Assembly (NCBI GenBank): GCA_002269645.1
Contig: NIVC01001306.1
Location: 124,001-188,000, forward strand
Reading direction: 5' to 3'
Source: Macrostomum lignano
Lineage: Eukaryota
Length of the DNA stretch: 64,000 nucleotides
Part shown: positions 18,465 through 45,632 of the stretch, piece by piece
Numbering within the stretch: position 1 is the stretch's first letter
Layout of the letters: every line of letters begins with the position of its first letter
The notes under the pieces: generated by a model
Told to the model about the DNA's origin: nothing
What the model saw: the letters and a program-made list of their open reading frames with translations, nothing else
Database searches by the model: none
Program-made: the position numbers and the translations under genes

Positions 18465-20315
18465 ATGCCGCACGTTGAGCAGGACATTAAGCTAGACTTC
18501 AAGGACGTTCTAATCCGGCCAAAACGAAGCACTTTAAAGTCTCGCTCAGAGGTTGACCTATGCCGCGAGTATGTATTTAGAAACAGTGGCGCAAAGTACT
18601 ACGGCGTGCCAATTATGACGGCGAACATGGACACTACTGGTACGTTTGAAATGGCACGCGCATTGGCCAAGCACGCAATGTTTACGGCGGTGCACAAGCA
18701 CTATTCAGCCCAGGAATGGCAGTCGTTTGCAGCCAATTCCGATCCGGAAGTGTTGGAGCACTGCGCCGTGTCTGCCGGCACTGGCGATTTAGAACGACTC
18801 GTCCAGATTCTCAAAGCTGTTCCGCAGCTGCGCTTCATCTGTCTAGACGTTGCTAACGGCTATTCGGAGAATTTCGTAGCTTTTGTGCGCAAAGTGCGCG
18901 ACCTGTTTCCTGAGCACACCATACTCGCTGGCAATGTGGTCACTGGCGAGATGGTTGAGCAGCTCATTCTATCTGGTAAATGATTATATAGTCTTATTTG
19001 GCTTTGTTCTACAGAATAGATATCAGGCTTCAATGAGACTAGATATCAGGCTCCTATGAGACTAGACATCAGAACGCGATGAGACTAGATATCAGGCTAC
19101 TATGAGACTAGACATCAGAACGCGATGAGACTAGATATCAGGCTCCTATGAGACTAGACATCAGAACGCGATGAGACTAGATATCAGGCTCCTATGAGAC
19201 TAGATATCAGGCTTCAATGATACTAGATATCAGGCTCCTATGAGACTAGACATCAGAACGCGATGAGACTAGATATTAGACTACGATGAGACTAGATATC
19301 AGGATCCTATGAGACTAGATATCAGGCTTCGATGAGACTAGATATCAGGCTTCGATAAAATTAGATATCAGACTTCGATAAAACTAGTTATCAGGCTATA
19401 ATCAGAATAGATATCAGGCTTCAATGAGAATAGATATCAGGTTAGGATGTGAATATATAGCAGAATTCGATGAGATGCGATTAGATATCAGGCTTCGATA
19501 AGAATAGATATCAGATTAGGATGTGAATATATACTCGTATATCAGAATTTCATGAGATAAGACTAGATATCTGGCTTTAATGAGACTAGATATCAGACTT
19601 TGATGGGACTAGACATCAGGCTACATTGACTCTGCATAAGAGGCTGTAAAGAGACCAGATATATGTATTTTTATTCTTTATGTTGATAATTTCACATTGC
19701 AACTCCACTTAAGCCCCAATTGGGGACATCGAAATTGCGGACCCTTCACAAAATCCTTCCCCCGCCCCCGCAGGCGCCGACGTGATCAAGGTTGGCATCG
19801 GGCCGGGCAGCGTGTGCACCACCCGAAAAAAGACCGGCGTCGGCTATCCGCAACTGTCCGCTGTGCTCGAGTGCGCCGACGCTGCTCACGGCCTCGGCGG
19901 CCACATCATCTCGGACGGCGGCTGCGTCAATCCCGGCGACGTTGCCAAAGCGTTCGGCGCCGGAGCCGATTTCGTTATGGCCGGCGGACTGTTCGCCGGA
20001 CACGACGAATCGGCCGGCGAAGTTATCGAACGGAACGGTAAAAAGTACAAATTGTTCTACGGTATGAGCTCGCGCACAGCTATGGACAGACACGCTGGCG
20101 GAGTGGCCGAGTACCGGGCCTCGGAGGGCAAGACTATCGAGATACCGTATCGCGGGCCGGTTGAGCGAACCGTGTTAGACATTCTTGGCGGAGTGCGCAG
20201 CGCCTGCACCTACGTTGGCGCCTCTAAGCTCAAGGAGCTGTCCCGCCGGACCACTTTTATTCGGGTCAGCATGCAGACTAACGAAGTGTTCGCCGCGCAT
20301 AATAAGGACGACTGA
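18465..20315 (+). CDS. GMPR: GMP reductase (350 aa; 2 exons: 18465-18975, 19774-20315)
   Basis: [33 protein letters not shown]-terminus; catalytic loop [27 protein letters not shown]; SDGG and [11 protein letters not shown] motifs. Phase-1 GT-AG intron joins to [10 protein letters not shown]; 1053 nt total. Confidence 0.97.
19015..19620 (+). repeat. About 23-bp intronic minisatellite (atgagactagatatcaggc...) with 46-bp dimer variant
   Basis: Period 23 at 19033/19056; alternating ctcct/aacgcg variants; fills most of the GMPR intron. Confidence 0.9.
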
Positions 20316-21345: not shown

Positions 21346-21467
21346 CATTTTCTCCTTGAAGATCACACCGTTTGCCAGTCAGAAATTCTCCCCAACGCCT
21401 TAATGAAGCGCAAACCCTGCTGATTTCAGAACGCATCTCGTTACTGCACAGGCATTTATTATTTGAA

Positions 21468-24400
21468 ATGCGTTGCTGGCGCAAGTTCGGCTGTCTGCTC
21501 TCTCTAGCCGGTTTGCTGGCTGCTCTGTGCGCCCTCACCGTCTGGCTGGGCGACTGCAGCAGCCGGTGCGCCGCTCAGCCGGTCTCCAGCAGCTCCACAG
21601 CGTCACCAACAACGCCGCCGCCTCTGTCTGGCCGGGCGCTGCGGTTGCACCGTCGGAATTGCGCCGACTCGCTAGCCGCCCTAGCCGATCTTCGCCGGGT
21701 GAAGGCGTCGGTCAGGCAGGAGCTGGTCCGGATGGAGCGCGAGCGGACCAAGATAATGCAACAGATTCGGGCAAGCCGAATCGAGCTAGCTAATCTGATG
21801 CGAAATCAGCGCAAGATTAGCGCCGATACGGAGATAGCGCGATCGGATTTGGCCGCCTTGCAAATCCGTTTAGCCGAGGCTGATCAAAGAAATCTGCCGG
21901 TCCTGCGGCTGCCGTTGAATATCTCGACTCTGAAGTCGGCTTCTGCGGTGGACAAGGCTAGCGAAGGCAACTGCGGCCTAGTTGACTGCTTCGACTATGC
22001 CCGGTGCGGGCTGGCCGACCAGCGGCCGAGATTCGCGCTGCTGTACTCGGCCACAGACTCGCTGACTGATGCTGCCAGACTGTTGAACTCCAGTCGGCGC
22101 CTCCTGCCTGATAGCATGTCAACAAATGTTGCTGTTCGCGACTCCTGCCTGGTGCTAGCTGACGTCGGGTCTTCATCGAAGTCGACGCTGTCGGCTGTTC
22201 CTGCTGCGACCAATCTGGTTGCTATGCTGTTGTTGCCGGCGTCGGCTGCTAGCGAGCGGCTGAGGCGCGGTCTGATAGCGGAGCGGCCTCGGGCTGTTGT
22301 GGCCTCGCGCTACCAACCGTCCGGGAGCTACCGGCCCGGCTGGGACATTGTCATGCCGGCTAAGGCGCCGTTCCGATCGGCCAGCGACCTCTGGGCCGCT
22401 CTGCCGCCATTGGTGCCAGCGCGAAGGCCGCGCCTATTAGCGGCGCCGCTTTTGCCCGGCGCCAATTCCAGCTGGTGGCGCCAGATTAGCGATGTCGATC
22501 GTTTAGTGCTAGACGAGCTTCAACGACTCTGTCGTAGCGACGTTGTCGACAACTTGACGTCCAAATTGGAGCTGCCCGCCCTGGCTGGCGCCACCTTCTG
22601 TCCGATTCTGGCGCCGGCCGGGGCACCGCTATCCACGCTGGGAGGTCAGCGGCGCCTACTGGACTGCCTGTTGGCCGGCTCAGTGCCGCTAATCCTCGGC
22701 GACATGCTGCCACCGTTCGGTGACCTACTAGAGCCGCTGTGGCGTAGAGCCATTGTCCGCCTGCCGAGGTCCCGATCTAGCGAGCTGGCCTGGCTGCTGG
22801 CCACGTACAGCGACGCCACGCTGTTGGAGTTGCGCCGACACGGCCGCCTGCTGCTCGAACGGCATCTGGGCACCTGGCGAGCCCAGGCTGCTACTCTGCT
22901 CACCCTGCTCAATAGGCGGCTGGGCTTGCCGGGTCCCGCAGCCGTGGGGCCTACAGGCTCCAGCGCCCTGCTGCCCGGGCATTCCCGCCTGCTCATGGGC
23001 CGCGTGCCCAGCCACTTCGACGAGACGCAGGACTACCTGGGCGCGGTGGAGCCGCCTCTGGACTCCGTGCTGTTTCAGGTGAGCCATCCTCTATAGCTGT
23101 CTCATAGCTTACCTGGTTGAGGCTGAAGAGATAGGGGAAGACGCGGGTTCGATTCCGTGCGCGGCCGCATTCATTGGCTTGGAGGTTGTGTGGTTCCACC
23201 CATGAAGGCCAACCCCGAAGGCACAGAGAGTGTACATGCCTGACGATCAAGAAAGTCAGGTCGCTGTACACCCTGTGTGAGCGTGTGCATGAGTGCGTGT
23301 CTGCGTACAGCATTGGTGCGCAGGAGTCTGCGGAAAGGACAGAATTGCTGTCAGCGCTTAATAAAACTTGTCTTCTCATTACCTAAACTCTTCCGCCTTA
23401 ATCCCTGAGCAGCACAACTACACAGCCCCGGCGCCAATCAGCCAGCTGCCGAACCCGCTGCTCAACTATCCAAGCCTGCCGGGCCATCCGCCGCCGCCGC
23501 CAACCGACGCCCAATTCAACGGTTCCGCCTACGGCTATCGCCCCATCAATCATTCTATGGGCACTGGTGGAGTCGAATTTAGCCGGGCGGCGGGCGGCAA
23601 CCTGCCAGCCGAGCAGTTCACGGCGGTTGTGCTCAGCTATAATCGCGAGTCAGTGCTGGTTGGCTCCCTGTCTAAACTGGCCGGCCTGCCCTACCTGCAC
23701 TCGGTGCTGGTGGTGTGGAATGGCGAGCGGCCGCCCAACCCCAGCACCGTCTGGCCGGATCTGGGCGGCGTGCCGCTGCATTTTATTCGCGGGCCTGGTG
23801 AGACTGAATGAGGGCGGGCCAGCCTCTTAGATCCTCAGGTGCTGGGCCAGCCTCCCAGATCCTCAGTTGCTGGGCCAGCCTCTTAGATCCTCAGGTGCTG
23901 GGCCAGCCTCCCAGATCCTCAGTTGCTGGGCCAGCCTCTTAGATCCTCAGTTGCTGGGCCAGCCTCCCAGAGTGTCAGTTGCTGGGCCAGCCTCTTAGAT
24001 CCTCAGTTGCTGGGCCAGCCTCCCAGAGTGTCAGTTGCTGGGCCAGCCTCTTAGATCCTCAGGTGCTGGGCCAGCCTCCCAGAGTGTCAGTTGCTGGGCC
24101 AGCCTCTTAGATCCTCAGTTGCTGGGCCAACCCACCCCCAGAGACTCAGAGCAAACCCCACTCGAATACTCTTGCGTGGATTTAAAGTCCTGACCAGTTT
24201 TGCTGCAACCCCCTCCGCACACTGCAGGCAACTCGCTCAACAACCGGTTCCTGCCGTGGTCCCAGATTCGCACCGAAGCTGTGCTGAGCCTTGACGATGA
24301 CGTGTACATGCGCCAGGACGAGCTGGTGCTGGCCTTCCGAGTCTGGCGCGAGCACCGTGATCGCATCGTCGGCTTCCCGGCCAGATTCCACGCCCGATCG

Positions 24401-24817
24401 GGCTCCGGCTGGGTGTACGATTCCAACCAGACCTGCGAATACTCCATGGTGCTCACAGGAGCGGCATTTCTTCACGTCCACTACCTGCACCTGTACTCAT
24501 ATTGGCTGCCCGCAGCTCTACGCGCCGAAGTCGACCGGCTGACAAACTGCGAGGACATCCTAATGAATTTTCTTGTTAGTCACGTGACTCGCAAGGCGCC
24601 AATCAAAGTGACGTCGCGCTGGACGTTTCCCTGCTTCGGCTGTTCCCAGTCGCTTTATAAAGACGATTCGCATTTCTTTGAACGGTCGCACTGTATTAAC
24701 TACTTCAGCGGCATGTTCGGGTACAACACCCTGCTGTACAGTCAGTTCAGGGCTGACTCGGTGCTGTTTAAGACCCGACTCGGCACTGACAAGGTCAAGT
24801 GCTTTAAGTACGTGTAA
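21468..24817 (+). CDS. EXTL3: Exostosin-like 3 glycosyltransferase (about 861 aa; exons 21468-23078, 23413-23797, 24228-24817)
   Basis: Type II membrane anchor ([22 protein letters not shown]), coiled coil, diverged exostosin domain. GT64 domain [13 protein letters not shown]...[10 protein letters not shown]...LSLDDD...[28 protein letters not shown]...[20 protein letters not shown] is EXTL3-like. Intron phases 0 and 1 are consistent. Start codon and exon-2 acceptor are inferred. Confidence 0.93.
23095..23362 (+). mobile_element. tRNA-derived SINE copy filling EXTL3 intron 1
   Basis: B-box gggttcgattcc; core gtgtacatgcctgacgatcaagaaagtcaggtcgctgtacaccctgtgtgagcg; tail gcgcttaataaaa. Confidence 0.75.
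23815..24130 (+). repeat. 28-bp intronic minisatellite (gctgggccagcctcYYagatcctcagKt), about 11 copies
   Basis: Period 28 at 23821/23849; EXTL3 intron 2. Confidence 0.9.
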
Positions 24818-24899: not shown

Positions 24900-26205
24900 A
24901 TCCCCGTATACACCGATATTCTTTCATCATTCATAACAGTCATTCATAATGGGGATTTCTGTACACACCTGTATCCAAATCCCCATAGACACCGATATTC
25001 ATAATGGGGGTTTCTGTACACACCTGTATCCCAATCCCCATAGACACCGATATTAATAATGGGGGTTTCTGTACACACCTGTATCCCAATCCCCATAGAC
25101 ACTGATATTCATAATGGGGGTTTCTGTACACACCTGTATCCCAATCCCCATAGACACCGATATTCATAATGGGGGTTTCTGTACACACCTGTATCCCAAT
25201 CCCCATAGACACCGATATTCATAATGGGGGTTTCTGTACACACCTGTATCCCAATCCCCATAGACACCGATATTCATAATGGGGGTTTCTGTATACACCT
25301 GCATCCCAATCCCCATAGACACCGATATTCATAATGGGGGTTCTGTACACACCTGTATCCCAATCCCCATAGACACCGATATTCATAATGGGGGTTTCTG
25401 TACACACCTGTATCCCAATCCCCATAGACACTGATATTCATAATGGGGGTTTCTGTACACACCTGTATCCCAATCCCCATAGACACCGATATTCATAATG
25501 GGGGTTTCTGTACACACCTGTATCCCAATCCCCATAGACACCGATATTCATAATGGGGGTTTCTGTACACACCTGTATCCCAATCCCCATAGACACTGAT
25601 ATTCATAATGGGGGTTTCTGTACACACCTGTATCCCAATCCCCATAGACACCGATATTCATAATGGGGGTTTCTGTACACACCTGTATCCCAATCCCCAT
25701 AGACACCGATATTCATAATGGGGGTTTCTGTACACACCTGTATCCCAATCCCCATAGACACCGATATTCATAATGGGGGTTTCTGTACACACCTGTATCC
25801 CAATCCCCATAGACACCGATATTCATAATGGGGGTTTCTGTACACACCTGTATCCCAATCCCCATAGACACCGATATTCATAATGGGGGTTTCTGTACAC
25901 ACCTGTATCCCAATCCCCATAGACACTGATATTCATAATGGGGGTTTCTGTACACACCTGTATCCCAATCCCCATAGACACCGATATTCATAATGGGGGT
26001 TTCTGTACACACCTGTATCCCAATCCCCATAGACACCGATATTCATAATGGGGGTTTCTGTACACACCTGTATCCCAATCCCCATAGACACCGATATTCA
26101 TAATGGGGGTTTCTGTACACCTGTATCCCAATCCCCATAGACACCGATATTCATAATGGGGGTTTCTGTACACACCTGTATCCCAATCCCCATATACACC
26201 GATAT
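24900..26205 (+). repeat. 55-bp satellite, about 23-24 near-identical copies
   Basis: acaccgatattcataatgggggtttctgtacacacctgtatcccaatccccatag; period 55 at 25021/25076; begins about 80 bp after the EXTL3 stop. Confidence 0.95.
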
Positions 26206-32019: not shown

Positions 32020-34953
32020 GGAAAGCCTGCTTGAAAGGGGGAACCAAGCCTGCTGAAAGGGGGGAACCAAGCCTGCTGAAAGGGGGGAACCAAGCCTGCT
32101 GGAAAGGGGGGGGAACCAAGCCTGCTGGAAAGGGGGGACCAAGCCTGCTGGAAAGGGGGGACCAAGCCTGCTGGAAAGGGGGGAACCAAGCCTGCTGGAA
32201 GGGGGGAACCAAGCCTGCTGGAAAGGGGGACCAAGCCTGCTGGAAGGGGGACCAAGCCTGCTGGAAGGGGGGGAACCAAGCCTGCTGGAAAGGGGGACCA
32301 AGCCTGCTGGAAGGGGGGAACCAAGCCTGCTGGAAAGGGGGACCAAGCCTGCTGGAAGGGAGGGGGGAACCAAGCCTGCTGGAAGGGGGAACCAAGCCTG
32401 CTGGAAGGGGGAACCAAGCCTGCTGGAAGGGGGGGGGAACCAAGCCTGCTGGAAAGGGGGACCAAGCCTGCTGGAAAGGGGGGAACCAAGCCTGCTGGAA
32501 GGGGGGAACCAAGCCTGCTGGAAAGGGGGACCAAGCCTGCTGGAAGGGGGACCAAGCCTGCTGGAAGGGGGGGAACCAAGCCTGCTGGAAAGGGGGACCA
32601 AGCCTGCTGGAAGGGGGGGAACCAAGCCTGCTGGAAAGGGGGACCAAGCCTGCTGGAAGGGGGGGGGGGAACCAAGCCTGCTGGAAAGGGGAACCAAGCC
32701 TGCTGGAAAGGGGGAACCAAGCCTGCTGGAAAGGGGGAACCAAGCCTGCTGGAAAGGGGGGGGGGAACCAAGCCTGCTGGAAGGGGGACCAAGCCTGCTG
32801 GAAAGGGGGGACCAAGCCTGCTGGAAGGGGGGAACCAAGCCTGCTGGAAAGGGGGGGGGGAACCAAGCCTGCTGGAAGGGGGGAACCAAGCCTGCTGGAA
32901 AGGGGGAACCAAGCCTGCTGGAAAGGGGGAACCAAGCCTGCTGGAAAGGGGGAACCAAGCCTGCTGGAAGGGGGGAACCAAGCCTGCTGGAAAGGGGGGG
33001 GGAACCAAGCCTGCTGGAAAGGGGGACCAAGCCTGCTGGAAGGGGGGAACCAAGCCTGCTGGAAAGGGGGGACCAAGCCTGCTGGAAAGGGGGGACCAAG
33101 CCTGCTGGAAAGGGGGAACCAAGCCTGCTGGAAAGGGGGGACCAAGCCTGCTGGAAAGGGGGGAACCAAGCCTGCTGGAAGGGGGGAACCAAGCCTGCTG
33201 GAAAGGGGGACCAAGCCTGCTGGAAGGGGGACCAAGCCTGCTGGAAGGGGGGAACCAAGCCTGCTGGAAAGGGGGACCAAGCCTGCTGGAAGGGGGGGAA
33301 CCAAGCCTGCTGGAAAGGGGGACCAAGCCTGCTGGAAGGGGGGGGAACCAAGCCTGCTGGAAAGGGGAACCAAGCCTGCTGGAAAGGGGGAACCAAGCCT
33401 GCTGGAAAGGGGGAACCAAGCCTGCTGGAAAGGGGGGGGGGAACCAAGCCTGCTGGAAGGGGGACCAAGCCTGCTGGAAGGGGGGAACCAAGCCTGCTGG
33501 AAGGGGGGAACCAAGCCTGCTGGAAAGGGGGGGGAACCAAGCCTGCTGGAAGGGGGGAACCAAGCCTGCTGGAAAGGGGGAACCAAGCCTGCTGGAAAGG
33601 GGGAACCAAGCCTGCTGGAAAGGGGGAACCAAGCCTGCTGGAAGGGGGAACCAAGCCTGCTGGAAAGGGGGGGGGAACCAAGCCTGCTGGAAGGGGGACC
33701 AAGCCTGCTGGAAGGGGGGAACCAAGCCTGCTGGAAGGGGGAACCAAGCCTGCTGGAAAGGGGGGGAACCAAGCCTGCTGGAAAGGGGGGACCAAGCCTG
33801 CTGGAAAGGGGGACCAAGCCTGCTGGAAAGGGGGAACCAAGCCTGCTGGAAGGGGGGGAACCAAGCCTGCTGGAAGGGGGAACCAAGCCTGCTGGAAAGG
33901 GGGAACCAAGCCTGCTGGAAAGGGGGAACCAAGCCTGCTGGAAAGGGGGAACCAAGCCTGCTGGAAGGGGGAACCAAGCCTGCTGGAAAGGGGGGGGAAC
34001 CAAGCCTGCTGGAAGGGGGACCAAGCCTGCTGGAAGGGGGGGAACCAAGCCTGCTGGAAAGGGGGGACCAAGCCTGCTGGAAAGGGGGGACCAAGCCTGC
34101 TGGAAAGGGGGAACCAAGCCTGCTGGAAAGGGGGACCAAGCCTGCTGGAAAGGGGGGAACCAAGCCTGCTGGAAGGGGGAACCAAGCCTGCTGGAAAGGG
34201 GGACCAAGCCTGCTGGAAGGGGGACCAAGCCTGCTGGAAGGGGGGGAACCAAGCCTGCTGGAAAGGGGGACCAAGCCTGCTGGAAGGGGGGGAACCAAGC
34301 CTGCTGGAAAGGGGGACCAAGCCTGCTGGAAGGGAGGGGGAACCAAGCCTGCTGGAAGGGGGAACCAAGCCTGCTGGAAGGGGGGAACCAAGCCTGCTGG
34401 AAGGGGGGGGGAACCAAGCCTGCTGGAAAGGGGGGACCAAGCCTGCTGGAAAGGGGGGGAACCAAGCCTGCTGGAAGGGGGGAACCAAGCCTGCTGGAAG
34501 GGGGGAACCAAGCCTGCTGGAAAGGGGGGGGAACCAAGCCTGCTGGAAGGGGGAACCAAGCCTGCTGGAAAGGGGGAACCAAGCCTGCTGGAAAGGGGGA
34601 ACCAAGCCTGCTGGAAAGGGGGAACCAAGCCTGCTGGAAAGGGGGAACCAAGCCTGCTGGAAGGGGGGAACCAAGCCTGCTGGAAAGGGGGGGGGGGAAC
34701 CAAGCCTGCTGGAAGGGGGACCAAGCCTGCTGGAAGGGGGGAACCAAGCCTGCTGGAAGGGGGAACCAAGCCTGCTGGAAAGGGGGGGAACCAAGCCTGC
34801 TGGAAAGGGGGGGGAACCAAGCCTGCTGGAAAGGGGGGACCAAGCCTGCTGGAAAGGGGGGACCAAGCCTGCTGGAAGGGGGGGAACCAAGCCTGCTGGA
34901 AAGGGGGGACCAAGCCTGCTGGAAAGGGGGGACCAAGCCTGCTGGAAAGGGGG
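32020..34953 (+). repeat. 2.9-kb G-rich minisatellite: (GA)ACCAAGCCTGCTGGAA(A)G5-11, roughly 120-130 units
   Basis: Invariant core accaagcctgctggaa with variable poly-G linker; explains the four approximately 1000-aa ORFs in the track. Confidence 0.97.
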
Positions 34954-35082: not shown

Positions 35083-37334
35083 ATGGCTCCAATCCGCATG
35101 CTGCCGCTGCTTCTGGCGACCCTGTCGGCTCTGACTTGGACAGCCTCTGCCGCTGCCTACCGGGAGCAGCGCTACCAGTGCCCGCAGCTGAGCACAGAGA
35201 ACTGCACCGCCGACAATGGCCTGGCCTTCTTCGACGGCTGCACAACTGTCGCCTGCATCGGCTGGCGCTCGGCCGTGAGGGAGCCGACTTACTGCCGGCC
35301 GGCTGTCACTGCCGCGGAGCTGAGTCGCTGCCGTCAGCTCAACAACCGGCTTGAAATCATTCAGAGCCGGGCGCAGGGCGCCGCTTTACCGGACGTCCTG
35401 GTCAACTGTCCGCAGTTCTCTGGCGTTGACATCTGTTCCACCGCCGATCAGTTCTTCACCTTCAACGACGGCTGCAATGTGCACCTGTGCGACGGCTCCG
35501 GCGGCACGTTCGAGCGAAGTCGGAACCAATGCCCGGAGGCCCGCACGCCGGAGCAACTATTCTTCTGCAAGGTCACCTTCAACTCAGTGGTTCGGGCCCA
35601 CGCCAGCCGGCACGCCTGCCGAGCTCAGGTGAGAGTTTACAGTTCTGGCTTCCAAACTGGAACTCCCCAAATTTTCCAAAACTTCTATATAGAACTTCTA
35701 TTCGAAATGCGATTAGATCAAGTATGCTAATTGACCAAGATTGATTCTCAAGCTTCTCTACATATTGTGTCCTCTCAAATCGGATTTCTGATTTATAATC
35801 AGAATTAATTATAATATTTACTGCATGGAAGCATGCTAAGGCTTGATTTCATTCATAGAGAGGTTGCTCAAGTTTAGTTCGTCTTAAATCCTTTACCTAA
35901 TCGTTTAAGCCAACTACTTCAGTTTTCTTTAAACTTGTCTAACAGCCTTCAGTCCCAGAAAAAATGTAAAGACGATTTCTTTCTCTCAAAACTCACTCTG
36001 CTGATTGTAATCTTACACTGGTCATGTAAAGGCATCACAAATCTTTCGCTGACACAGCTGAATAAAAAGGTAACTTAATACTCGTTTCAGCTACTGACAA
36101 ATATGCGCATTAACTACTGAAAACTAGCTGAAATCACCGCTTCCTGGAAAGCTTCCCATAGACGCATTCCTATTTGATTCTGCGAGCAGAATTGCTTTTG
36201 TCTATGGCAAAATCTCCTTTAGGTCTAATGCATCATAGGTGCGGGATTGAGATATATTTTTAGAAATTGAAGCCAACAAAAATAAAGAGCAGGGTTGATT
36301 TTGTCTATGGTTGAACTTTATGTTCTATGATTAGGATAGAATAGAAGGATAGAAGGATTAGGATAGAAATTCATGAACGCTAACGAGTGCGTCATTGGCA
36401 AAAGCGCGAGTGCGCTTCTAAAAAACTTTTGAGAACTTACGACGACTTGTGGTTTAGCTGGGTGCCACTAAGTAGTCTACTAGTGTATATAAGATCTATG
36501 GTATTATGTATTGTTCCCTTCTGTCTATGATTCAATGCAAGGATTTCCCGGCAGCAAATTTATTAGTTTAAAGCCAAAAGCACTAACTGTTAATAGCCGG
36601 CAAACAATAAAATTCACTCGATTTGCCTTTAGTCCTCCTTCTGCTTTAATTGCTTAGTCCTGAAATCTCTTTCGATCACCGATCCCTCCACTACTCAGGC
36701 CGAGAACGCCGAGCGCATCTGCGAGGTCACGTGGCCCGGCTACCAGTTCAGTGACGCCTGTTACGGCGGCAATCACTTCGTCTGCGGCCCGGGGAAAAAC
36801 CTGCTGACCCGGCCGCCGACAGGCCAGTGCCCGCTCGAGAGCGCCTCCGAGAGCATCAAGTGCCGCGAGGTAGCCGCCGAGGTTGCCGAACTGCTAGCTC
36901 CGGATCGCGGCTACACCTGCCCGGAGCTGCATCGTTCCTCGGTGTGCACAGCCGAGAATAGCGGCTTCGTCTATAACGACGGCTGCAACCTGGTGCTGTG
37001 CGAAGGCCCCAGCGCCGGCCTCAGCGAGGGCCGCACCTGCAAGCTGCCGCTCAAAGAGTCCAACCCAGCTGGCAGCGAGTTCTGCCGCCGGCGGGCCGCC
37101 GAGGTGCGCCGCGAATTGGCCGCCGGGCGCCGACACAACGGCCCCTGCGTCACCGCTGCGGAGGCCTGCCCCGGCCCGGCGGCCGAGGGAGTCAGCTACT
37201 TCGACGGCTGCAACTATTGCACCTGTCTGGGCGCGGCCAGGTCGCAATGCACCCGGCGGAAGTGCCTCGGCTTCTTCGGCACCGATGCGGAGTTCTCCGC
37301 CTACTGCGCCACCGTTGCTAGGCGATTGGACTGA
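35083..37334 (+). CDS. Secreted Cys-rich protein with five pacifastin-like repeats (about 393 aa; exons 35083-35628, 36699-37334)
   Basis: Signal peptide MAPIRMLPLLLATLSALTWTASAAA; phase-0 GT-AG intron keeps the frame open. The last repeat CPGPAAEGVSYFDGCNYCTCLGAARSQCTRRKC fits the pacifastin pattern C-x(9-13)-CNxCxC-x(6-8)-CT-x3-C; four upstream repeats share the (F/Y)xDGC motif. Gene model is well supported, family call moderate. Confidence 0.8.
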
Positions 37335-37580: not shown

Positions 37581-38153
<573 letters not shown>

Positions 38154-38436
38154 ATCTATAATTACTGTGAGTCGCATTGAGAACATTAGATTTAGTGCTG
38201 CTCAGACAGGCAGAACCTCACAGAAGGATTACTTACCTTGCATCGCCAGTTTCCGCCGTTTCACATTGAATTATTTATTTTCCGACTAGCAATCAGCCAG
38301 AGAGCCGGTGGATTCAGTCTCGAGAGAATTACTCAGACTGCGCGCTGCGATTTCTAAAGGATTGAATTATTGATCTGAATTGGTGGATATGCAGTTTAAC
38401 ATTTTAGCGCATTGATTTTAGCTACGTTCCGTGTTT

Positions 38437-38915
38437 CCATGGGAGGGTGGAAACCGTAGGGGAGGGTTGAAAACCGTAGGGGAGGGTGGGAACCGTAGGG
38501 GAGGATGGGAACCGTAGGGGAGGGTGGGCACCGTAGGGGAGGGTGGGAACCGTAGGGGAGGGTGGGAACCGTAGGGGAGGGTGCAGGAACCGTAGGGGAG
38601 GTGGAAACCGTAGGGGAGGGTGGGAACCGTAGGGGAGGATGGATACCGTAGGGGAGGATGGGAACCGTAGGGGAGGATGGGTACCGTAGGGGAGGGTGGG
38701 AACCGTAGGGGAGGGTGGGAACCGTAGGGGAGGATGGATACCGTAGGGAGGGTGGGAACCGTAGGGGAGGATGGGTACCGTAGGGGAGGATGGATACCGT
38801 AGGGAGGATGGGAACCATAGGGGAGGTGGAAACCGTAGGGAGGGTGGGAACCGTAGTGGAGGGTGGGAAATGTAGGGGAGGGTGGGAACCGTAGAGGAGG
38901 GTGAGTACCGTAGGG
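38437..38915 (+). repeat. About 20-21-bp G-rich minisatellite (ggggagggtgggaaccgta)
   Basis: Direct reading; about 23 degenerate units. Confidence 0.92.
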
Positions 38916-39220
38916 GAGTAGCCACTTCTGCATGTACTACTAAGGTAAGCATAAAATTACCAAAGTACTCTTTACAAGCTTTTTCTATTTCCTCATAGTT
39001 CACAAAATCAACTCAAATGCACCCAGCATAACAACCAACAAAAAAATTAAACTGGTAATTTCAACTGTTGACAGATTTAATTTATTATTTTTAGCAAGCC
39101 GTAGTCTGACCGGTCATTAGACACCGGCTACCCGTGAATCATAATCCTACTCATAATTTTTACATATAACCGTTTAGTTAATACGGCCAGCGTTTAAAAT
39201 TATCAGAATTTTATGCTTCA

Positions 39221-39539
39221 TCACAGCAGCTCCAAGTCGTCAATGGTCATCTTGACTTCGGCCGCGATTCTCTTCTGCTCCTGCGATTTCTTCTTTTGCT
39301 GCTCCTGCTGGGACGAGTTCTCCACCGCGGCCGAGTCGGTCAGCTGCTTCTCTTCGAACTCTCGCCGTCTCGGCCCTGCCGGTGCCTGCCGTCTGTCGAT
39401 GGCGCTCCCGGAGCCGTCGTTTGTCGGCTTCCCCGGGCCGGCGCCGTTTCGAGCCGACGGCAACCGATCAGCGCTGCTGTAGCTGGGCAGCTGGACAGCG
39501 CTGGCTTTGTAGTTGTAGGCTGAGGACATGGCCTCCCTT
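39221..39539 (-). CDS. Orphan terminal exon or short single-exon gene (102-aa ORF from ATG 39529), unknown product
   Basis: GC-rich codon pattern like neighbouring exons; acceptor-like CAG at 39542-39540; AATAAA on the minus strand near 39085; hydrophilic MSSAYNYKASAVQ...KRIAAEVKMTIDDLELL. No recognised family. Confidence 0.5.
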
Positions 39540-39540
39540 C

Positions 39541-40541
<1,001 letters not shown>

Positions 40542-41373: not shown

Positions 41374-44300
41374 TCAGCTCGGCCGGCCATTGTTGCTACC
41401 CAACACCTGTTGCTCAACTGGCACGGTCAGGTCCAGCTTGTCCACATCGGTCGGCTCGCTCATGCCCATGCCGCGGAGCCCGGCGTAGAACACCGACGGC
41501 TTCGGCACGCTGGTGTGCCCGTCTCGTTTAGTCTGCGTCTCCTGGTCCTTCGGCGGGTACACCTGGGCCACGTTGTCCCGGCGCAGGTTGCTCAGGTTGG
41601 TCTGCTGCGAGTGGGTCACCTTAGTGCGCAGGTTCGCCTGAGCGTAGAATAGGATAGGGGGTTAAATGGTTTTTTTATGAAATACGTGACAAACGCATTA
41701 GGCGATTATACTACTGATTGAGTAGAAATATGAACATTTTTGTGATTCTGTCTGTAGGGTAGGAAACAATAGGATAGAATAAGATTGATTAGGGTAGAAT
41801 AGGGTTGAATTTGATAGAATAGAGTAGAATAGAATAGGATAGAATATGATAGACTAGGATAGGATCGGATAAGGTAGAGTAGGATATTAAATAAAAGGTT
41901 AGAATAAAATATAAATAGGTCTGAATAGGATAAAATAGGATTTGATAGAAAAGTATAGGAGAAAATAGAATAAAAAGGATAGTATAGAATAGGATAGGAT
42001 AGAAAAAAAAAGTTATAACCAAAGAGGATAGAAGAGAGCTTGGCTGGATTTTTACGGGACAAATCTAGGTTGAAAAATAGAGTGCGGTATAAAAGTAGAT
42101 ATGTATGTGATGCAATAAGATCGAATAGGCTTACAAGCTTAATCGCCTTCCTGCGCAGCTCCCACTCGTTCCACTCGTACGACTTGACAATATTAGTGTC
42201 CATAAAGTGCGTGTCGGTCTCTGTCTGGGCGTCGCACTTTGTAACCGGCTTCTCGATCATCTTGCCAGCGTCCCGAGACTGAAAGGCAGTTATTGAATAA
42301 TTTCAATGTTAAATATTTAGATGAGGGAATCAGAGTCTTGAAATTATGTATAGTTACTTCTGCTCTATACCTCACTATTCTTGGAATTTTCTGGCCCGTG
42401 GTTAGAGTAAAAGTACATTTGAGCAAAGTATGAGTCATTGAGTCATAGACACCAAGGCTAGAAAGATCTACTGACAATTGGTTTGGCGGGGCCTCTCCAC
42501 TCACTCACCCCAATTCCATTCGCGTCTCTCCTCTGCTCTATCTACCTTCTCTCTCTCAACTCTCACCATGTACCTTCTCTATCTTCTATCTTCCTATCTA
42601 CCTTCTCCCTCTCCCATCTCCCAATCTACCTTCTCCCTCTCCCATCTACCTATCTACTTCTCTGTCTCATATCTCCCGATCTACCTTCTCTCTCCTCATC
42701 CCTATCTACTTCTCTCTTTCCTCTGTCCCTATCTACTTCTCTCTCTCTCCCATCTCCCTATCTTCCTTTTCTCTCCTCTCTCCCTCTCTTCTCTACCCCT
42801 CTCTCCCTCTCCCACCAATCAATCCCCCCTAACCTGGGAGTGCGGGGTGAGCGCGGCGAACTGGCTGTGCAGCTCGAGTATCTGGATGAGCTCGGGGCTC
42901 CGCCTGGCCGTGTTGGCCACGCTGGTGATGAACTCGTCCGGCTGGTTGGCGAACTCGTAGGCGGCCTTCCGGCTCGAGAAGATGAAATAGTTGTTGCGGT
43001 AGTGCAGGATGCCAACGCTGGGATTGCCGGGGATCAGCAGTCGGTCGAAGACCACCAGGGCCCAGGCGCAGTAGCCGCGGTACATCACGGGCAGCCGGCT
43101 GTAGTTCTTCGTAGTCTCCGGGAACAGCCATTCCCGGTCGCGGAAATCGGCCGGATTAACTCGTTCAGCGGGATCGGATGAAGCCTCCAGCCGCTGCTGG
43201 TCGGAGCGAACTTCGCCGGCCTCTTCTAGGAATGGCGCCACAATGTCCGGCTTGAATAGGTCGCGGTGGACGCGGCTGAATGCGTCCAGATTGTTGAGGA
43301 TGTTGGTCAGCACGGACAGCAGGACCATCTCGTCCTGGGGCACGGAGGGCATCGGGGTGGCGGTTGTTGTGATGATTTTTACGGGAGGGTAGCCTTACCG
43401 ACACCTGGCTCCAGTAACCACATTCTGGCGCCCCCTGACACCGATGCCCTATTGTGCCCCCCATCCTGACACCGATGCCCTATTGTGCCCCCCATCCTGA
43501 CACCGATGCCCTATTGTGCCTCCCCCCCTTGACACCGATTCCCTATTGTGGCCCAATCCTTGACACCGATTCCCTATTGTGGCCCAATCCTTGACGCTAA
43601 AACCTACTTCAAGTAATTTAGCTCCCCTTGCACATTTCTGCACCTTCTTCTACATTATAGGCCACAATCACACACCATATCGGAATACCTCGACCTTAAA
43701 AAAACTTTTAATTCACCTGAAATCCGCTCCAGATCTCGGACAGGTGCACAAACTGCGGATAGACCTGAGCCGTTGGCACCGCAGTTTTGCTCTGCACAGT
43801 GTTCTGCAGCTGCTCAAGCCTGGCCTGCAGCTGCTGCATCAGCTGCTCAACTTGATCCGCCGAGCGGATAACGTCGCTCAGCAGCACTTTGAGAAAGACT
43901 TCGGCCTGGCGACAGTTGATCAGCGATTCGCGCAGCAGCTCAAGCGACAGGCCGACATCAGCGCCGGGCTTCTGCGCCTTCACGGCCAGGCTCTCGATCA
44001 GCGCCGCATACTGTGCGGCCGTCTCCTGCACCCGGCCGATCTCCTCGTCCAAGCTGTGCGTGGTGGCCGGGATGCCTTCGTTGAGAAACGACGGCAGATC
44101 GTCGATACCTTCGCCGCCTTTGCCGCAGTCTTTGTTGAATAGTCGGATGCCGCTAACGATGGCGGTGAGCTCCTGCAGGTGACGCTCTTTGTCTTTGCGC
44201 GGCATCTGCATGAAAGCGCCCAGTTCGGACTGCGGGAACACCGACTGCAGCGCCGCGGTGGCCTCGCGCACCACGTTGATGTCGGTTGGCGAACCGAGAC

Positions 44301-44727
44301 CCGACTGGAGCAGCACAGCCGACACGATCTTCCTGTAGAGGCTGTCCAACTCGTCCCGAGTTCGAGCCCGCGAATCCGTGATCTCGCGCATCACCGGCAT
44401 CAGGCGCGACTTCATGATGCGATGGTGCTCCTCGAGGAACTCCCGCCTAGCCGTGTAGTTCATGTCGAAGAATACCTGCATCTTGATGGTGTCCAGCGAC
44501 GGCGACTTCGTGTCCATCAGCTTGTCGACGCACAGTTTGATCAGCTTCTGCACGTCGTCCCTGGTTAGTGTCTTGTCCGTGCTGAAGTCATTCGTGGGAT
44601 CCAGCACCACAGCTTTCACCATGAAGGCCACGAGCGTCTCGGACACGGCCTGGCCGCGGGAGGCGCACTGCTGTGCGATCTCGCGGATGATGTTCTTGAT
44701 GACGCTTTCGGCCTGTGCGCGCGACAT
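41374..44727 (-). CDS. CFAP206: Cilia- and flagella-associated protein 206 (about 639 aa; exons 44727-43717, 43334-42834, 42278-42135, 41637-41374)
   Basis: MSRAQAESVIKNIIREIAQQC...SETLVAFMVKAVVLDP...LDTIKMQVFFDMNYT; YRGYCAW..V..D.LLIPGNP; QTETDTHFMDTNIVKSYEWNEWELRRKAIKL; ANLRTKVTHSQQTNLSNLRRDN. All three introns are phase 0 GT-AG. Confidence 0.95.
41750..42125 (+). repeat. (ATAG/ATAGA)-rich low-complexity tract in CFAP206 intron 3
   Basis: Direct reading. Confidence 0.75.
42520..42815 (+). repeat. CT-rich low-complexity tract in CFAP206 intron 2
   Basis: Direct reading. Confidence 0.8.
43425..43595 (+). repeat. 31-bp minisatellite (ctgacaccgatgccctattgtgccccccatc), about 5 copies, CFAP206 intron 1
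   Basis: Period 31 at 43441/43472. Confidence 0.88.
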
Positions 44728-45632
44728 TTTCTTGGCATGCAAAATCGGGCGTGTGGAGCTTCACAGAAAAAACTATAAAGAATATTTTTTCTTTTACTGA
44801 AGCTTAACTTTGTAAATTTCGGCAGCTAAATTTTTTCTTTAGCTGGGAAATATATAGCTTACATTGAGCTAAGAATTAGAAGTGTTGAAATATTTAAAAA
44901 TTGCTTTTTTTATAGAAAATCTAAGTATGGCACAAAGAGAAGAATCGCTCATGCTGTCATGGCATAAACTTTCAACATTAAATTTTATTATTGGTACAAG
45001 CGTATGTATTTATTCACGTATTTTTACTTTAGCAGCTACAAAAATTGGTTGCATCATTGTTTTTGCTTTTGATATTCATAGTGACAAAACCTAAAATATT
45101 AAATGTGATGAAAATAATTATCCAGGAAAAAACTGTGTCTATAATATGAAAATTCATAAAAATTTCAGTAATAATGAAGCATTGGACATATGAAGCAAAT
45201 TCAACCATACACGGTGGAATATTTCGATATAAAGGTGACTGGATATTTTTTATTTACATGGAAAAGACTGCGAAAATATTCAAATAAACCTTTTATTCTA
45301 GGTAAATAATACAATCTGATGCCTAGCAGATAAATGAAAGTAGTTTTTTTAGAATTAAAGTTAATGAATCCATAAAGCGTAAAAAATACCATATAGGTTA
45401 TGATAAGATTTCTGTTGTCACCTGCAAGCTGCAATGAAATGTAAAACGGTTATTTTTATAAATTCAAACTTTTGTAGCCTCGGTAGAAATGGTTAGCACT
45501 AACGATTATAACAAAAAACTTTAAACTGAGTAGAAAGTCATAATAAAAAAATATTTTTAAGAAAGAAGAAAAGCTAAAAAGAACTTTTCTATACTTCTTT
45601 AATCTGATTTTTCTACTTATTTAAGTTAGCTT

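What the first reader, a model, noticed from the sequence alone, without database searches (positions are those of the whole stretch)
35083..37334. Secreted protein with one canonical and four remodelled pacifastin-like modules
Seen: repeat 5 has the full six-Cys pattern (C..DGCNYCTC..CTRRKC). Repeats 1-4 (CTADNGLAFFDGCTTVAC..YC; CSTADQFFTFNDGCNVHLC..QC; CEVTWPGYQFSDAC..FVC..QC; CTAENSGFVYNDGCNLVLC..TC) lack exactly Cys3 and Cys5. All five add a flanking Cys pair (an N-terminal C, often CPxL, and a C in a predicted helix after the core). Established: pacifastin disulfides are 1-4, 2-6, 3-5, with P1 two residues after Cys5 (Arg here, trypsin-type), and the family is mostly known from arthropods. 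Inference: coordinated loss of one disulfide and gain of another defines a possibly new domain variant, e.g. a multi-headed protease inhibitor or mucus/adhesive/secretory scaffold in a non-arthropod.
Basis: partly seen in the sequence, partly recalled or inferred. Interest (0 to 1): 0.72.

Follow-up and report, generated by a model that had tools for sequence, protein, structure and literature searches.

The report
Flatworm protein of five remodelled pacifastin modules
This is a real, secreted, cysteine-rich protein of the flatworm Macrostomum lignano built from five copies of a pacifastin-type protease-inhibitor module; each copy carries an extra cysteine pair, four have lost one of the three classic disulfide bridges, and this module design appears not to have been described.

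Summary
The two-exon gene (35083..35628 + 36699..37334, +) encodes the 393-aa Macrostomum lignano protein BOX15_Mlig009177g1. It has a signal-peptide-like N-terminus and 32 Cys in five internal repeats. Repeat 5 has the full six-Cys pacifastin framework with CTRRKC; repeats 1-4 lack exactly Cys3 and Cys5. All five carry a flanking Cys pair.

Homology to pacifastin is well supported, but indirectly for repeats 1-4. Pfam Pacifastin_I scores this protein below its threshold (19.8 vs 27.9 bits, repeat 5 only). A colinear relative (P0004, 32% identity) scores 77.5 bits with all five modules matched. A profile of 6-Cys modules alone matches canonical domains (hhalign 96.8%, E 2.4e-10; shuffled controls at most 3.1%). 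An AlphaFold model of repeat 4 (pLDDT 90) matches pacifastin inhibitors in its 12 best PDB hits.

Across 53 related modules, Cys3 and Cys5 are present together (23) or absent together (30), never singly. The flanking pair is present in all 53, so its gain preceded the loss and was not coordinated with it.

The likely function is a secreted trypsin-type inhibitor head (repeat 5, P1 Arg/Lys conserved) plus four degenerate modules. This is untested. It is a new variant of a known kind, of moderate interest.

The parts
35083..35628 (+). Exon 1 (codons 1-182): signal peptide, repeat 1, repeat 2 and the first 5 residues of repeat 3
   Evidence: ORF and GT donor at 35629. The spliced product is identical to PAA67668.1. 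GC 64% against 37% in the intron.
35629..36698 (+). Intron, 1070 bp, GT..AG, phase 0. It lies inside repeat 3, between its flank Cys (C179) and Cys1 (C190).
   Evidence: The orthologous transcript contig L001 is colinear with the spliced CDS.
36699..37334 (+). Exon 2 (codons 183-393 plus the TGA stop): rest of repeat 3, repeat 4, repeat 5
35083..35157 (+). Probable signal peptide (aa 1-25, MAPIRMLPLLLATLSALTWTASA|AA)
   Evidence: Hydrophobic core with mean Kyte-Doolittle 2.1, an ASA motif, and no later TM-like stretch. This is an inference; no signal-peptide predictor was available.
35176..35382 (+). Repeat 1 (aa 32-100), 6-Cys module: Ca33, C1 41, C2 53, C4 58, C6 71, Cb83
35404..35613 (+). 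Repeat 2 (aa 108-177), 6-Cys module: C109, 118, 131, 136, 150, 162
35614..36911 (+). Repeat 3 (aa 178-253, interrupted by the intron), 6-Cys module with a 3-residue insertion between C2 and C4: C179, 190, 203, 211, 226, 237
36915..37139 (+). Repeat 4 (aa 255-329), 6-Cys module: C256, 265, 278, 283, 296, 311. This is the module that was modelled.
   Evidence: AF2 pLDDT 90.2, three strands plus a C-terminal helix. The top 12 PDB fold hits are all pacifastin inhibitors.
37143..37331 (+). Repeat 5 (aa 331-393), 8-Cys module: flank pair C332/C385 plus the full pacifastin core C339, 353, 356, 358, 366, 371
   Evidence: Pfam Pacifastin_I 24.2 bits, E 2.9e-5, when scanned alone. 33.0 bits against my own HMM of 84 canonical domains, where shuffles reach at most 10.6. 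The only PDB sequence hit is the pacifastin-related peptide 7snd.
37248..37265 (+). Putative reactive-site loop of repeat 5: C366-T-R368(P1)-R369(P1')-K-C371
   Evidence: The position follows the published Cys5-Thr-P1-P1'-Xaa-Cys6 rule (PMC2689174, PMC13388995). The ortholog has CTKRSC; the paralog terminal modules have CTRRAC, CTRAAC and CTRRSC.

Best explanation
The gene encodes a secreted, soluble protein of about 40 kDa from the free-living flatworm Macrostomum lignano. It consists of five tandem modules derived from the pacifastin serine-protease-inhibitor domain.

Module anatomy. Each module is a pacifastin three-stranded beta-sheet core. To this are added an N-terminal arm and a C-terminal alpha-helix, each carrying one additional cysteine (Ca and Cb). 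By elimination, Ca and Cb most likely bond to each other and clamp the helix onto the core.

Architecture. The layout is (N-type module)n followed by one C-type module. It recurs in at least four further M. lignano loci (Mlig003398, Mlig001679, Mlig004023 and UniRef A0A1I8HYL8) and in about 20 unlabelled eukaryotic transcripts and contigs.

Repeat 5. The terminal module keeps all six pacifastin cysteines, the Asn after Cys2, the Gly after Cys4, the Thr after Cys5, and a basic P1 (Arg368). It most likely acts as a standard-mechanism (substrate-like, tight-binding) inhibitor of trypsin-like serine proteases.

Repeats 1-4. These have lost the Cys3-Cys5 bridge that braces the reactive loop. In this particular protein they have also lost the x-Thr-P1-P1'-x-Cys-Pro loop motif that many paralog modules retain. 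They are more likely structural or binding modules than active inhibitor heads.

Shown versus inferred. Shown here: gene structure, repeat anatomy, homology, the paired Cys loss, the predicted fold, and purifying selection. Inferred: disulfide pairing, secretion, and inhibitory activity and specificity.
For: The gene is real and constrained.
- It is identical to the NCBI model.
- An expressed ortholog exists: transcript contig L001 from SRR28338165, 69% identity.
- dN/dS is 0.24 overall and 0.18-0.33 for each module. All 32 Cys are conserved.

Pacifastin homology.
- Pfam Pacifastin_I is the best hit for this protein, on repeat 5 only: 19.8 bits for the whole protein and 24.2 bits for the module alone.
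- The repeat profile A1, searched against 1.84 billion representatives, finds 39 proteins. 16 of these look like canonical multi-domain pacifastins; the 10 that were scanned score Pacifastin_I 57-493 bits.
- P0004 is colinear with this protein (32% identity over 385 aa, E 4.5e-46). It scores 77.5 bits with all 5 modules matched. P0006 scores 65.6 bits with 4 stretches and P0005 49.9 bits with 3.
- hhalign, 6-Cys modules only against 84 canonical domains: probability 96.8%, E 2.4e-10. Reversed and 30 column-shuffled controls reach at most 3.1%.
- hhalign, this protein's own 6-Cys repeats against canonical domains: 87.6%, E 3.5e-6. Against the other 6-Cys modules: 98.8%, E 5.7e-17.
- The family profile A3 against PDB sequences gives 16 hits, all pacifastin inhibitors, best E 1e-5.

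Fold. The AF2 model of repeat 4 has pLDDT 90.2 and pTM 0.74, with three strands plus a helix. Foldseek ranks 1-12 are all pacifastin inhibitors, with TM normalised to target 0.49-0.72 and rmsd 1.4-3.5 A.

Paired loss. In 53 modules there are 23 with both Cys3 and Cys5, 30 with neither, and 0 with only one.

Reactive site. P1 is Arg or Lys in repeat 5 and in its ortholog and paralog equivalents.
Against: - This protein fails Pfam's own gathering threshold (19.8 < 27.9 bits).
- Repeats 1-4 taken singly score no better than shuffled sequence against a canonical-domain HMM: 1.7-9.2 bits against a shuffle maximum of 10.6. Their assignment rests on transitive homology.
- Repeat 5 departs from the strict 2009 spacing pattern in two places. 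Cys1-Cys2 is 13 residues, not 9-12. The Gly comes one residue after Cys4, not 2-3.
- Foldseek E-values are weak (0.5-6) because the domain is tiny. The MSA used for the model contained 8-Cys modules.
- No coordinates were available, so no disulfide pairing was checked.
- No expression or biochemical data were found.
- The full-length model is unusable (pLDDT 33.6).
- The C-terminal helix follows Cys6 directly, on the primed side of the putative reactive loop, and could hinder protease docking.
Confidence: 0.62

Rival explanations
1. All five modules are active heads. On this reading the protein is a true multi-headed inhibitor: the 6-Cys modules still present a canonical binding loop, the Ca-Cb clamp substitutes for the lost Cys3-Cys5 brace, and different heads target different proteases.
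For: Many 6-Cys modules in paralogs keep the loop motif [ST]-T-[LFMR]-x-x-C-P, with the Cys4-Cys6 spacing fixed at 12. Repeat 2 here reads R-S-R-N-Q-C-P. All modules are under purifying selection. The predicted fold is retained.
Against: In this protein, repeats 1, 3 and 4 have no Thr at P2 and no typical P1 (REPTY, PPTGQ, SEGRT). The repeat 2 candidate P1 Arg is Asn in the ortholog. According to PMC13388995, Cys3-Cys5 braces the reactive-loop geometry.
Confidence: 0.2
2. The protein is not an inhibitor at all. On this reading it is a structural or secretory scaffold (mucus, egg-shell, adhesive or seminal-fluid component) that merely reuses a stable disulfide-rich fold.
For: PMC13388995 argues that non-arthropod pacifastin domains are often embedded in matrix-associated multidomain proteins. 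Four of the five modules here are degenerate. There are no clear dibasic processing sites between modules except RR326-327 before repeat 5.
Against: No other domain types, no low-complexity or glycosylated linkers and only one N-glycosylation sequon are present. The basic P1 in the terminal module is conserved across the ortholog and three paralogs, which is what an active trypsin-type inhibitor would show.
Confidence: 0.15
3. The repeats are chitin-binding type-2 (peritrophin-A/CBM14) domains, as UniProt's automatic name for this entry says, or VWC/SVWC/TIL-like modules.
For: The UniRef name is 'Chitin-binding type-2 domain-containing protein'. The repeats have six Cys and often start with CP. 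Canonical pacifastin proteins and some paralogs give weak secondary VWF/VWC/SVWC hits.
Against: No CBM_14, VWC, SVWC or TIL match at E <= 10 for this protein or any of its repeats. The family profile and the fold search return only pacifastins above noise. UniProt's automatic names for members of this one family contradict each other: chitin-binding, pacifastin, thyroglobulin type-1 and uncharacterized.
Confidence: 0.03

Closest known systems
Pacifastin family inhibitors (Pfam PF05375 Pacifastin_I), e.g. locust SGPI-1/SGTI, SGCI, PMP-C, PMP-D2
   Same: Repeat 5 has the Cys framework C..C-N-x-C-x-C..G..C-T-x3-C, and its CTRRKC loop resembles the trypsin-type CTRKGC class. All modules share the [FY]-x-D-G-C-N core and a predicted three-stranded sheet. 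The best sequence and fold matches in the PDB are exclusively these proteins.
   Different: Every module adds about 10 N-terminal and 20-25 C-terminal residues, with an extra Cys pair and an alpha-helix. Four of the five modules lack Cys3-Cys5. The host is a flatworm. The protein falls below Pfam's threshold. There are no regular dibasic linkers.
Non-arthropod 'ancestral' pacifastin-like domains of PMC13388995 (Sci Rep 2026)
   Same: These are pacifastin domains outside Arthropoda, and that survey includes one platyhelminth sequence. The Cys1-Cys2 loop is 13 residues or longer (13 in repeat 5). Basic P1 residues are enriched.
   Different: That survey required the intact six-Cys scaffold and rejected everything else, so modules with a 4-Cys core are outside it by design. 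It does not mention a C-terminal helix or an additional Cys pair: 'helix' and 'additional cysteine' have 0 occurrences in its text. No Macrostomum entry was found in its held supplements.
M. lignano paralogs Mlig003398g1 (A0A267F8N7) and Mlig001679g1 (A0A1I8G3C6), auto-named 'Pacifastin domain-containing protein'
   Same: They share the N-type modules plus one C-type module architecture, the same 6-Cys and 8-Cys module types, and the species.
   Different: They pass Pfam's threshold, and their 6-Cys modules keep the T-T-[LF]-x-x-C-P loop. The window protein is more diverged and carries a different (chitin-binding) automatic name.

Membership tests
Pacifastin (PF05375) | Score at or above Pfam's gathering threshold (27.9 bits) | tested here: not met
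   Whole protein 19.8 bits, E 6.8e-4, one stretch (repeat 5). Repeat 5 alone 24.2 bits. Repeats 1-4 give no hit. Colinear relatives do pass: P0004 77.5 bits, P0006 65.6, P0005 49.9.
Pacifastin (PF05375) | Six-Cys framework with Asn after Cys2 and Thr after Cys5 (pattern in PMC2689174) | tested here: met
   Met for repeat 5 only: C339-x13-C353-N-Y-C356-T-C358-L-G-x5-C366-T-RRK-C371. Two spacings fall one residue outside the strict 2009 ranges (Cys1-Cys2 is 13; Gly is 1 residue after Cys4).
Pacifastin (PF05375) | Six-Cys framework in repeats 1-4 | tested here: not met
   Cys3 and Cys5 are absent in all four repeats. These are derived modules, not canonical members.
Pacifastin (PF05375) | Profile-level homology of the 6-Cys modules to canonical domains | tested here: met
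   hhalign 96.8%, E 2.4e-10, against controls of at most 3.1%. Paralog 6-Cys modules score 20-29 bits against a canonical-only HMM, where the shuffle maximum is 10.6. The window's own repeats 1-4 link only transitively.
Pacifastin (PF05375) | Three-stranded antiparallel beta-sheet fold | tested here: met
   Repeat 4 model: pLDDT 90.2, strands at 19-21, 26-31 and 34-37. Foldseek PDB ranks 1-12 are all pacifastins, TMt up to 0.72. This is a prediction, not a structure.
Pacifastin (PF05375) | Disulfide connectivity 1-4, 2-6, 3-5 | not testable with these tools
   Model coordinates are not returned. Indirect support only: Cys3 and Cys5 are always present or absent together in 53 modules.
Pacifastin (PF05375) | Inhibition of serine peptidases through a P1-P1' site between Cys5 and Cys6 | not testable with these tools
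   The loop CTRRKC is present and its basic P1 is conserved. Activity needs a biochemical assay.
Chitin-binding type-2 / CBM14 (the UniProt automatic name) | Match to the CBM_14 profile or fold | tested here: not met
   No CBM_14 hit at E <= 10. No CBM14 or tachycitin chain appears among the fold or PDB-sequence hits.
   No hit for this protein. In paralogs the SVWC or VWC E-values are 0.04-0.5, against Pacifastin_I at 3e-4 to 6e-22.

The most novel reading that the evidence does not exclude
The 'helix-clamped' pacifastin module (pacifastin core plus an N-terminal arm and a C-terminal helix tied by an extra disulfide) may be an undescribed domain subfamily. In it, the added clamp would have made the loop-bracing Cys3-Cys5 bridge dispensable, allowing its loss in one or more lineages. 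The resulting 6-Cys modules would then be either inhibitors with a more flexible, re-specified reactive loop or neofunctionalised binding modules. That would make this a natural example of stepwise disulfide rewiring in a minimal inhibitor scaffold.
Probability: 0.35. Interest if true: 0.6.

Novelty: new variant of a known kind. Interest (0 to 1): 0.45.

Why it matters
Pacifastins are among the smallest standard-mechanism protease inhibitors. They have been used as directed-evolution scaffolds; the complement MASP inhibitor in PDB 4djz is one example. Their three-disulfide framework is treated as strictly invariant and is used as an inclusion filter in family surveys.

This flatworm family shows that the framework can be extended by a fourth disulfide with a helix, and then lose the bridge said to brace the reactive loop, while the predicted fold stays the same.

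If confirmed biochemically, this would do three things. It would widen the definition of the family. It would show that six-Cys filters and the current Pfam model under-count it. It would also offer natural templates for testing how much of the scaffold an inhibitor loop needs.

For flatworm biology it flags a small, unstudied family of secreted candidate protease regulators. UniProt's automatic names for its members are mutually inconsistent.

Tried and rejected
- Full-length AF2 with a 3-sequence MSA gave pLDDT 33.6 and was unusable. It was replaced by a single-module model with a 53-module MSA.
- The search for homologous proteins with the module alignment A3 found 40 candidates but none scored. 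This search was wasted.
- I tried to place the unlabelled relatives taxonomically. Cluster look-ups returned names for M. lignano only. Contig look-ups gave only sample ids: SRR28338165, SRR30276804/12, DRR639838, JGI 3300030740 and ERZ21788738. A search with the RIC3 neighbour of P0028 returned no named protein. The distribution outside Macrostomum therefore stays unknown.
- Literature searches found nothing on this family's expression or function: 'pacifastin' with 'Macrostomum', the four Mlig gene ids, and M. lignano secreted protease inhibitors.
- An NJ tree of the modules, with the Cys3 and Cys5 columns masked, recovers a clade containing 12 of the 14 C-terminal-type modules. The 6-Cys and 8-Cys N-type modules remain interleaved and unresolved, so the number of loss events cannot be stated.
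- CBM14, VWC, SVWC and TIL were rejected (see rival explanations). Weak Pfam hits to DUF6970, Pox_T4_N and Pepsin-I3 (E 0.015-0.13) were treated as noise.
- No paralog lies elsewhere in the window (tblastn).
Full report
**What is there**

The window is genomic DNA of the free-living flatworm Macrostomum lignano. It is AT-rich and repeat-laden, with GC-rich exons.

The finding's coordinates are exactly a two-exon gene on the + strand. The ATG is at 35083. Exon 1 runs to 35628. A GT-AG, phase-0 intron occupies 35629..36698. Exon 2 runs from 36699 to the TGA at 37332-37334.

The 393-aa product is identical over its whole length to NCBI PAA67668.1, 'hypothetical protein BOX15_Mlig009177g1'. Two near-identical copies (g2, g3) lie elsewhere in the assembly. 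UniRef's automatic name for it is 'Chitin-binding type-2 domain-containing protein'.

The N-terminus looks like a signal peptide and no later hydrophobic segment exists (inference).

The gene is functional. A 69%-identical ortholog is present as an intron-less transcript contig in SRR28338165. dN/dS is 0.24 overall and 0.18-0.33 in each repeat. All 32 cysteines are conserved.

**Checking the observation**

The protein has five internal repeats, with off-diagonal tblastn matches down to E 3e-7.

- Repeats 1-4 have six Cys each; repeat 5 has eight.
- In the repeat alignments (A1, A3), six Cys columns are invariant. I call them Ca, C1, C2, C4, C6 and Cb.
- Repeat 5 has two more, at the positions of pacifastin Cys3 (DGCNYCTC) and Cys5 (CTRRKC).
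Two details need adding: 'CPxL' applies only to repeats 1, 2 and 4, and repeat 3 has a 3-residue insertion between C2 and C4.

**Is it pacifastin?**

Direct tests on this protein are suggestive but sub-threshold.

- Pfam Pacifastin_I is the top hit, but at 19.8 bits for the whole protein and 24.2 bits for repeat 5 alone. The gathering score is 27.9.
- The only PDB sequence that repeat 5 hits is a pacifastin-related peptide (7snd, E 0.49).
- Repeats 1-4 individually hit nothing. Against an HMM I built from 84 canonical domains they score 1.7-9.2 bits, no better than shuffles (maximum 10.6). Repeat 5 scores 33.0 bits.

The case is made by relatives. A profile of ten repeats (this protein plus its ortholog) was searched against 1.84 billion representative proteins and found 39 proteins. 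They fall into two groups.

- 16 look like canonical multi-domain pacifastins. The 10 that were scanned score Pfam Pacifastin_I 57-493 bits.
- About 23 share this protein's module type.

Among the second group, P0004 is colinear with the window protein: five modules, 32% identity over 385 residues, E 4.5e-46. It scores 77.5 bits on Pacifastin_I with all five modules matched, four of which are 6-Cys. The M. lignano paralogs P0006 and P0005 score 65.6 bits (4 stretches) and 49.9 bits (3 stretches).

To exclude the possibility that repeat 5 alone carries the signal, I compared profiles.

| hhalign comparison | Probability | E-value |
|---|---|---|
| 30 6-Cys modules vs 84 canonical domains | 96.8% | 2.4e-10 (30 columns) |
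| Same query vs reversed template | 0.5% | - |
| Same query vs 30 column-shuffled templates | at most 3.1% | - |
| This protein's and its ortholog's 6-Cys repeats vs canonical domains | 87.6% | 3.5e-6 |
| Same repeats vs the other 6-Cys modules | 98.8% | 5.7e-17 |

The aligned consensus for the first row is GF.Y.DGCN.vtC..g...tt...Cp against G.sf.DGCN.C.C..g...CT...C.

The 53-module family profile, searched against all PDB sequences, returns 16 hits. Every one is a pacifastin-family inhibitor, best E 1e-5.

**Fold**

The full-length AF2 model was useless (pLDDT 33.6). Repeat 4, a 6-Cys module, was then modelled with the 53-module alignment.

- The model has pLDDT 90.2 and pTM 0.74.
- It shows three beta-strands followed by a loop and a 14-residue C-terminal helix that contains Cb.
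- In a Foldseek search of 350,542 PDB chains, ranks 1-12 are all pacifastin inhibitors: SGCI/SGPI-2 scaffold, PMP-C, the CTI-homolog pacifastin, SGPI-1, PMP-D2v and others.
- These cover essentially the whole 33-38-residue targets, with TM 0.49-0.72 normalised to the target and rmsd 1.4-3.5 A.
- E-values are weak (0.5-6), as expected for so small a domain. The MSA also contained 8-Cys modules. This is corroboration, not proof.

**Evolution of the cysteines**

I parsed 53 modules from 24 family members.

- Cys3 and Cys5 are both present in 23 modules and both absent in 30. No module has only one. This is what is expected if they bond to each other, as in pacifastin, where the published connectivity is 1-4, 2-6, 3-5 (PMC2689174, PMC13388995).
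- Ca and Cb are present in all 53 modules and absent from the canonical pacifastins recovered.
- The extra pair is therefore the family-defining gain. It coexists with an intact Cys3-Cys5 in many modules, for example every module of P0011, P0016, P0019, P0028 and P0030.
- The loss of Cys3-Cys5 is a later event within N-type modules.

A neighbour-joining tree with the Cys3 and Cys5 columns masked recovers a clade containing 12 of the 14 C-terminal-type modules. These are always 8-Cys, with Ca-x6-C1 and a [FY]FGT..[EQ][FLM]...C tail. The tree cannot resolve how many times the N-type modules lost the bridge.

That Ca pairs with Cb is an inference by elimination.

**Likely function**

Repeat 5 has all the hallmarks listed in the literature.

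- It has the Asn after Cys2, a Gly in the Cys4-Cys5 loop, and the Thr after Cys5.
- Its loop reads C-T-R368-R-K-C, which places Arg at P1.
- The ortholog has C-T-K-R-S-C. The equivalent modules of three relatives have CTRRAC, CTRAAC and CTRRSC.
- A conserved basic P1 argues for a trypsin-type standard-mechanism inhibitor.

In many paralog 6-Cys modules the loop motif survives with Cys5 replaced by Thr or Ser: [ST]-T-[LFMR]-x-x-C-P, with Cys4-Cys6 spacing fixed at 12. Some of those may still be inhibitory.

In the window protein, however, repeats 1-4 read REPTY, RSRNQ, PPTGQ and SEGRT before Cys6. The one plausible P1 (Arg147 in repeat 2) is Asn in the ortholog.

My best reading is one active trypsin-directed head plus four conserved but probably non-inhibitory modules. 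The rivals are that all five are active, that the protein is a pure scaffold, or that it is a chitin-binding or VWC-type protein.

No other domains, transmembrane segments or regular dibasic linkers are present. I found nothing on expression or phenotype.

**Comparison with what is known, and novelty**

- Pacifastins were long thought to be confined to arthropods, with Placozoa and Onychophora as exceptions (PMC2689174).
- A 2026 structure-guided survey (PMC13388995) extends them to many phyla and mentions one platyhelminth sequence.
- UniProt already auto-labels two M. lignano paralogs 'Pacifastin domain-containing protein'. A pacifastin domain in a flatworm is therefore not new.
- What I could not find described is the module design: the extra arm, helix and Cys pair on every module, and the natural 4-Cys-core variant.
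- The 2026 survey explicitly rejected any candidate lacking the six-Cys scaffold, and its text never mentions a helix or additional cysteines.
- The present protein carries a misleading automatic name. The automatic names within this one family disagree: chitin-binding, pacifastin, thyroglobulin type-1 and uncharacterized.

I rate this a new variant of a known kind, of moderate interest.

**Limits**

- The taxonomic range beyond M. lignano is unknown, because the other members come from unlabelled transcriptome and metagenome assemblies.
- Disulfide pairing, secretion and inhibition are all inferred.

Noticed in passing
window 32023-34953: A 23-bp minisatellite (about 126 copies, 89% matches, consensus AAGCCTGCTGGAAAGGGGGAACC) ends 130 bp upstream of the gene's ATG. 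It creates four spurious ORFs of about 1000 aa in different frames and on both strands.
   Followed up: partly
window 37581-38159, 38441-38918, 39539-40541: Immediately downstream of the gene lie (ATCT)n with about 145 copies, a 19-bp array with 25 copies, and (TCTG)n with about 250 copies. The gene sits in an island between simple-repeat arrays.
   Followed up: no
window 24942-26205: A 55-bp satellite, 23 copies at 98% identity. The window contains many other tandem arrays with periods of 18-92 bp.
   Followed up: no
window 18465-18983 and 19782-20315 (+): Two exons of an IMPDH/GMP-reductase-family gene (Pfam IMPDH E 3e-17 and 2.5e-51). A 23-bp tandem array (19013-19514) lies in the intervening intron.
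   Followed up: partly
window 21372-24817 (+): An exostosin-type glycosyltransferase gene. The GT47 domain is in ORF 21372-23096. The GT64 domain is split over 23368-23811 and 24200-24817, with a 28/56-bp array (23816-24129) in the intron.
   Followed up: partly
window 43708-44742 (-): An exon encoding an FAP206 (ciliary protein) domain, Pfam E 7.7e-36.
   Followed up: no
UniProt/UniRef names of family members (P0001, P0005, P0006, P0008, P0013): The automatic names for members of this one family are mutually inconsistent: 'Chitin-binding type-2', 'Pacifastin domain-containing' (two entries), 'Uncharacterized' and 'Thyroglobulin type-1'. Pfam supports only pacifastin.
   Followed up: yes
L002 6001-6681 (ENA ERZ21788738 contig ctg48897l): The two-module relative P0028, whose modules are both 8-Cys, is a single-exon gene about 3.6 kb downstream of an RIC3-domain gene on an unlabelled metazoan-looking HiFi contig. 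Its organism could not be identified.
   Followed up: partly
P0013 (UniRef A0A1I8HYL8), residues about 1-431: This M. lignano gene model repeats the same roughly 160-residue block twice and starts mid-module. It looks like a mis-assembled or mis-predicted tandem duplicate of a family member.
   Followed up: no
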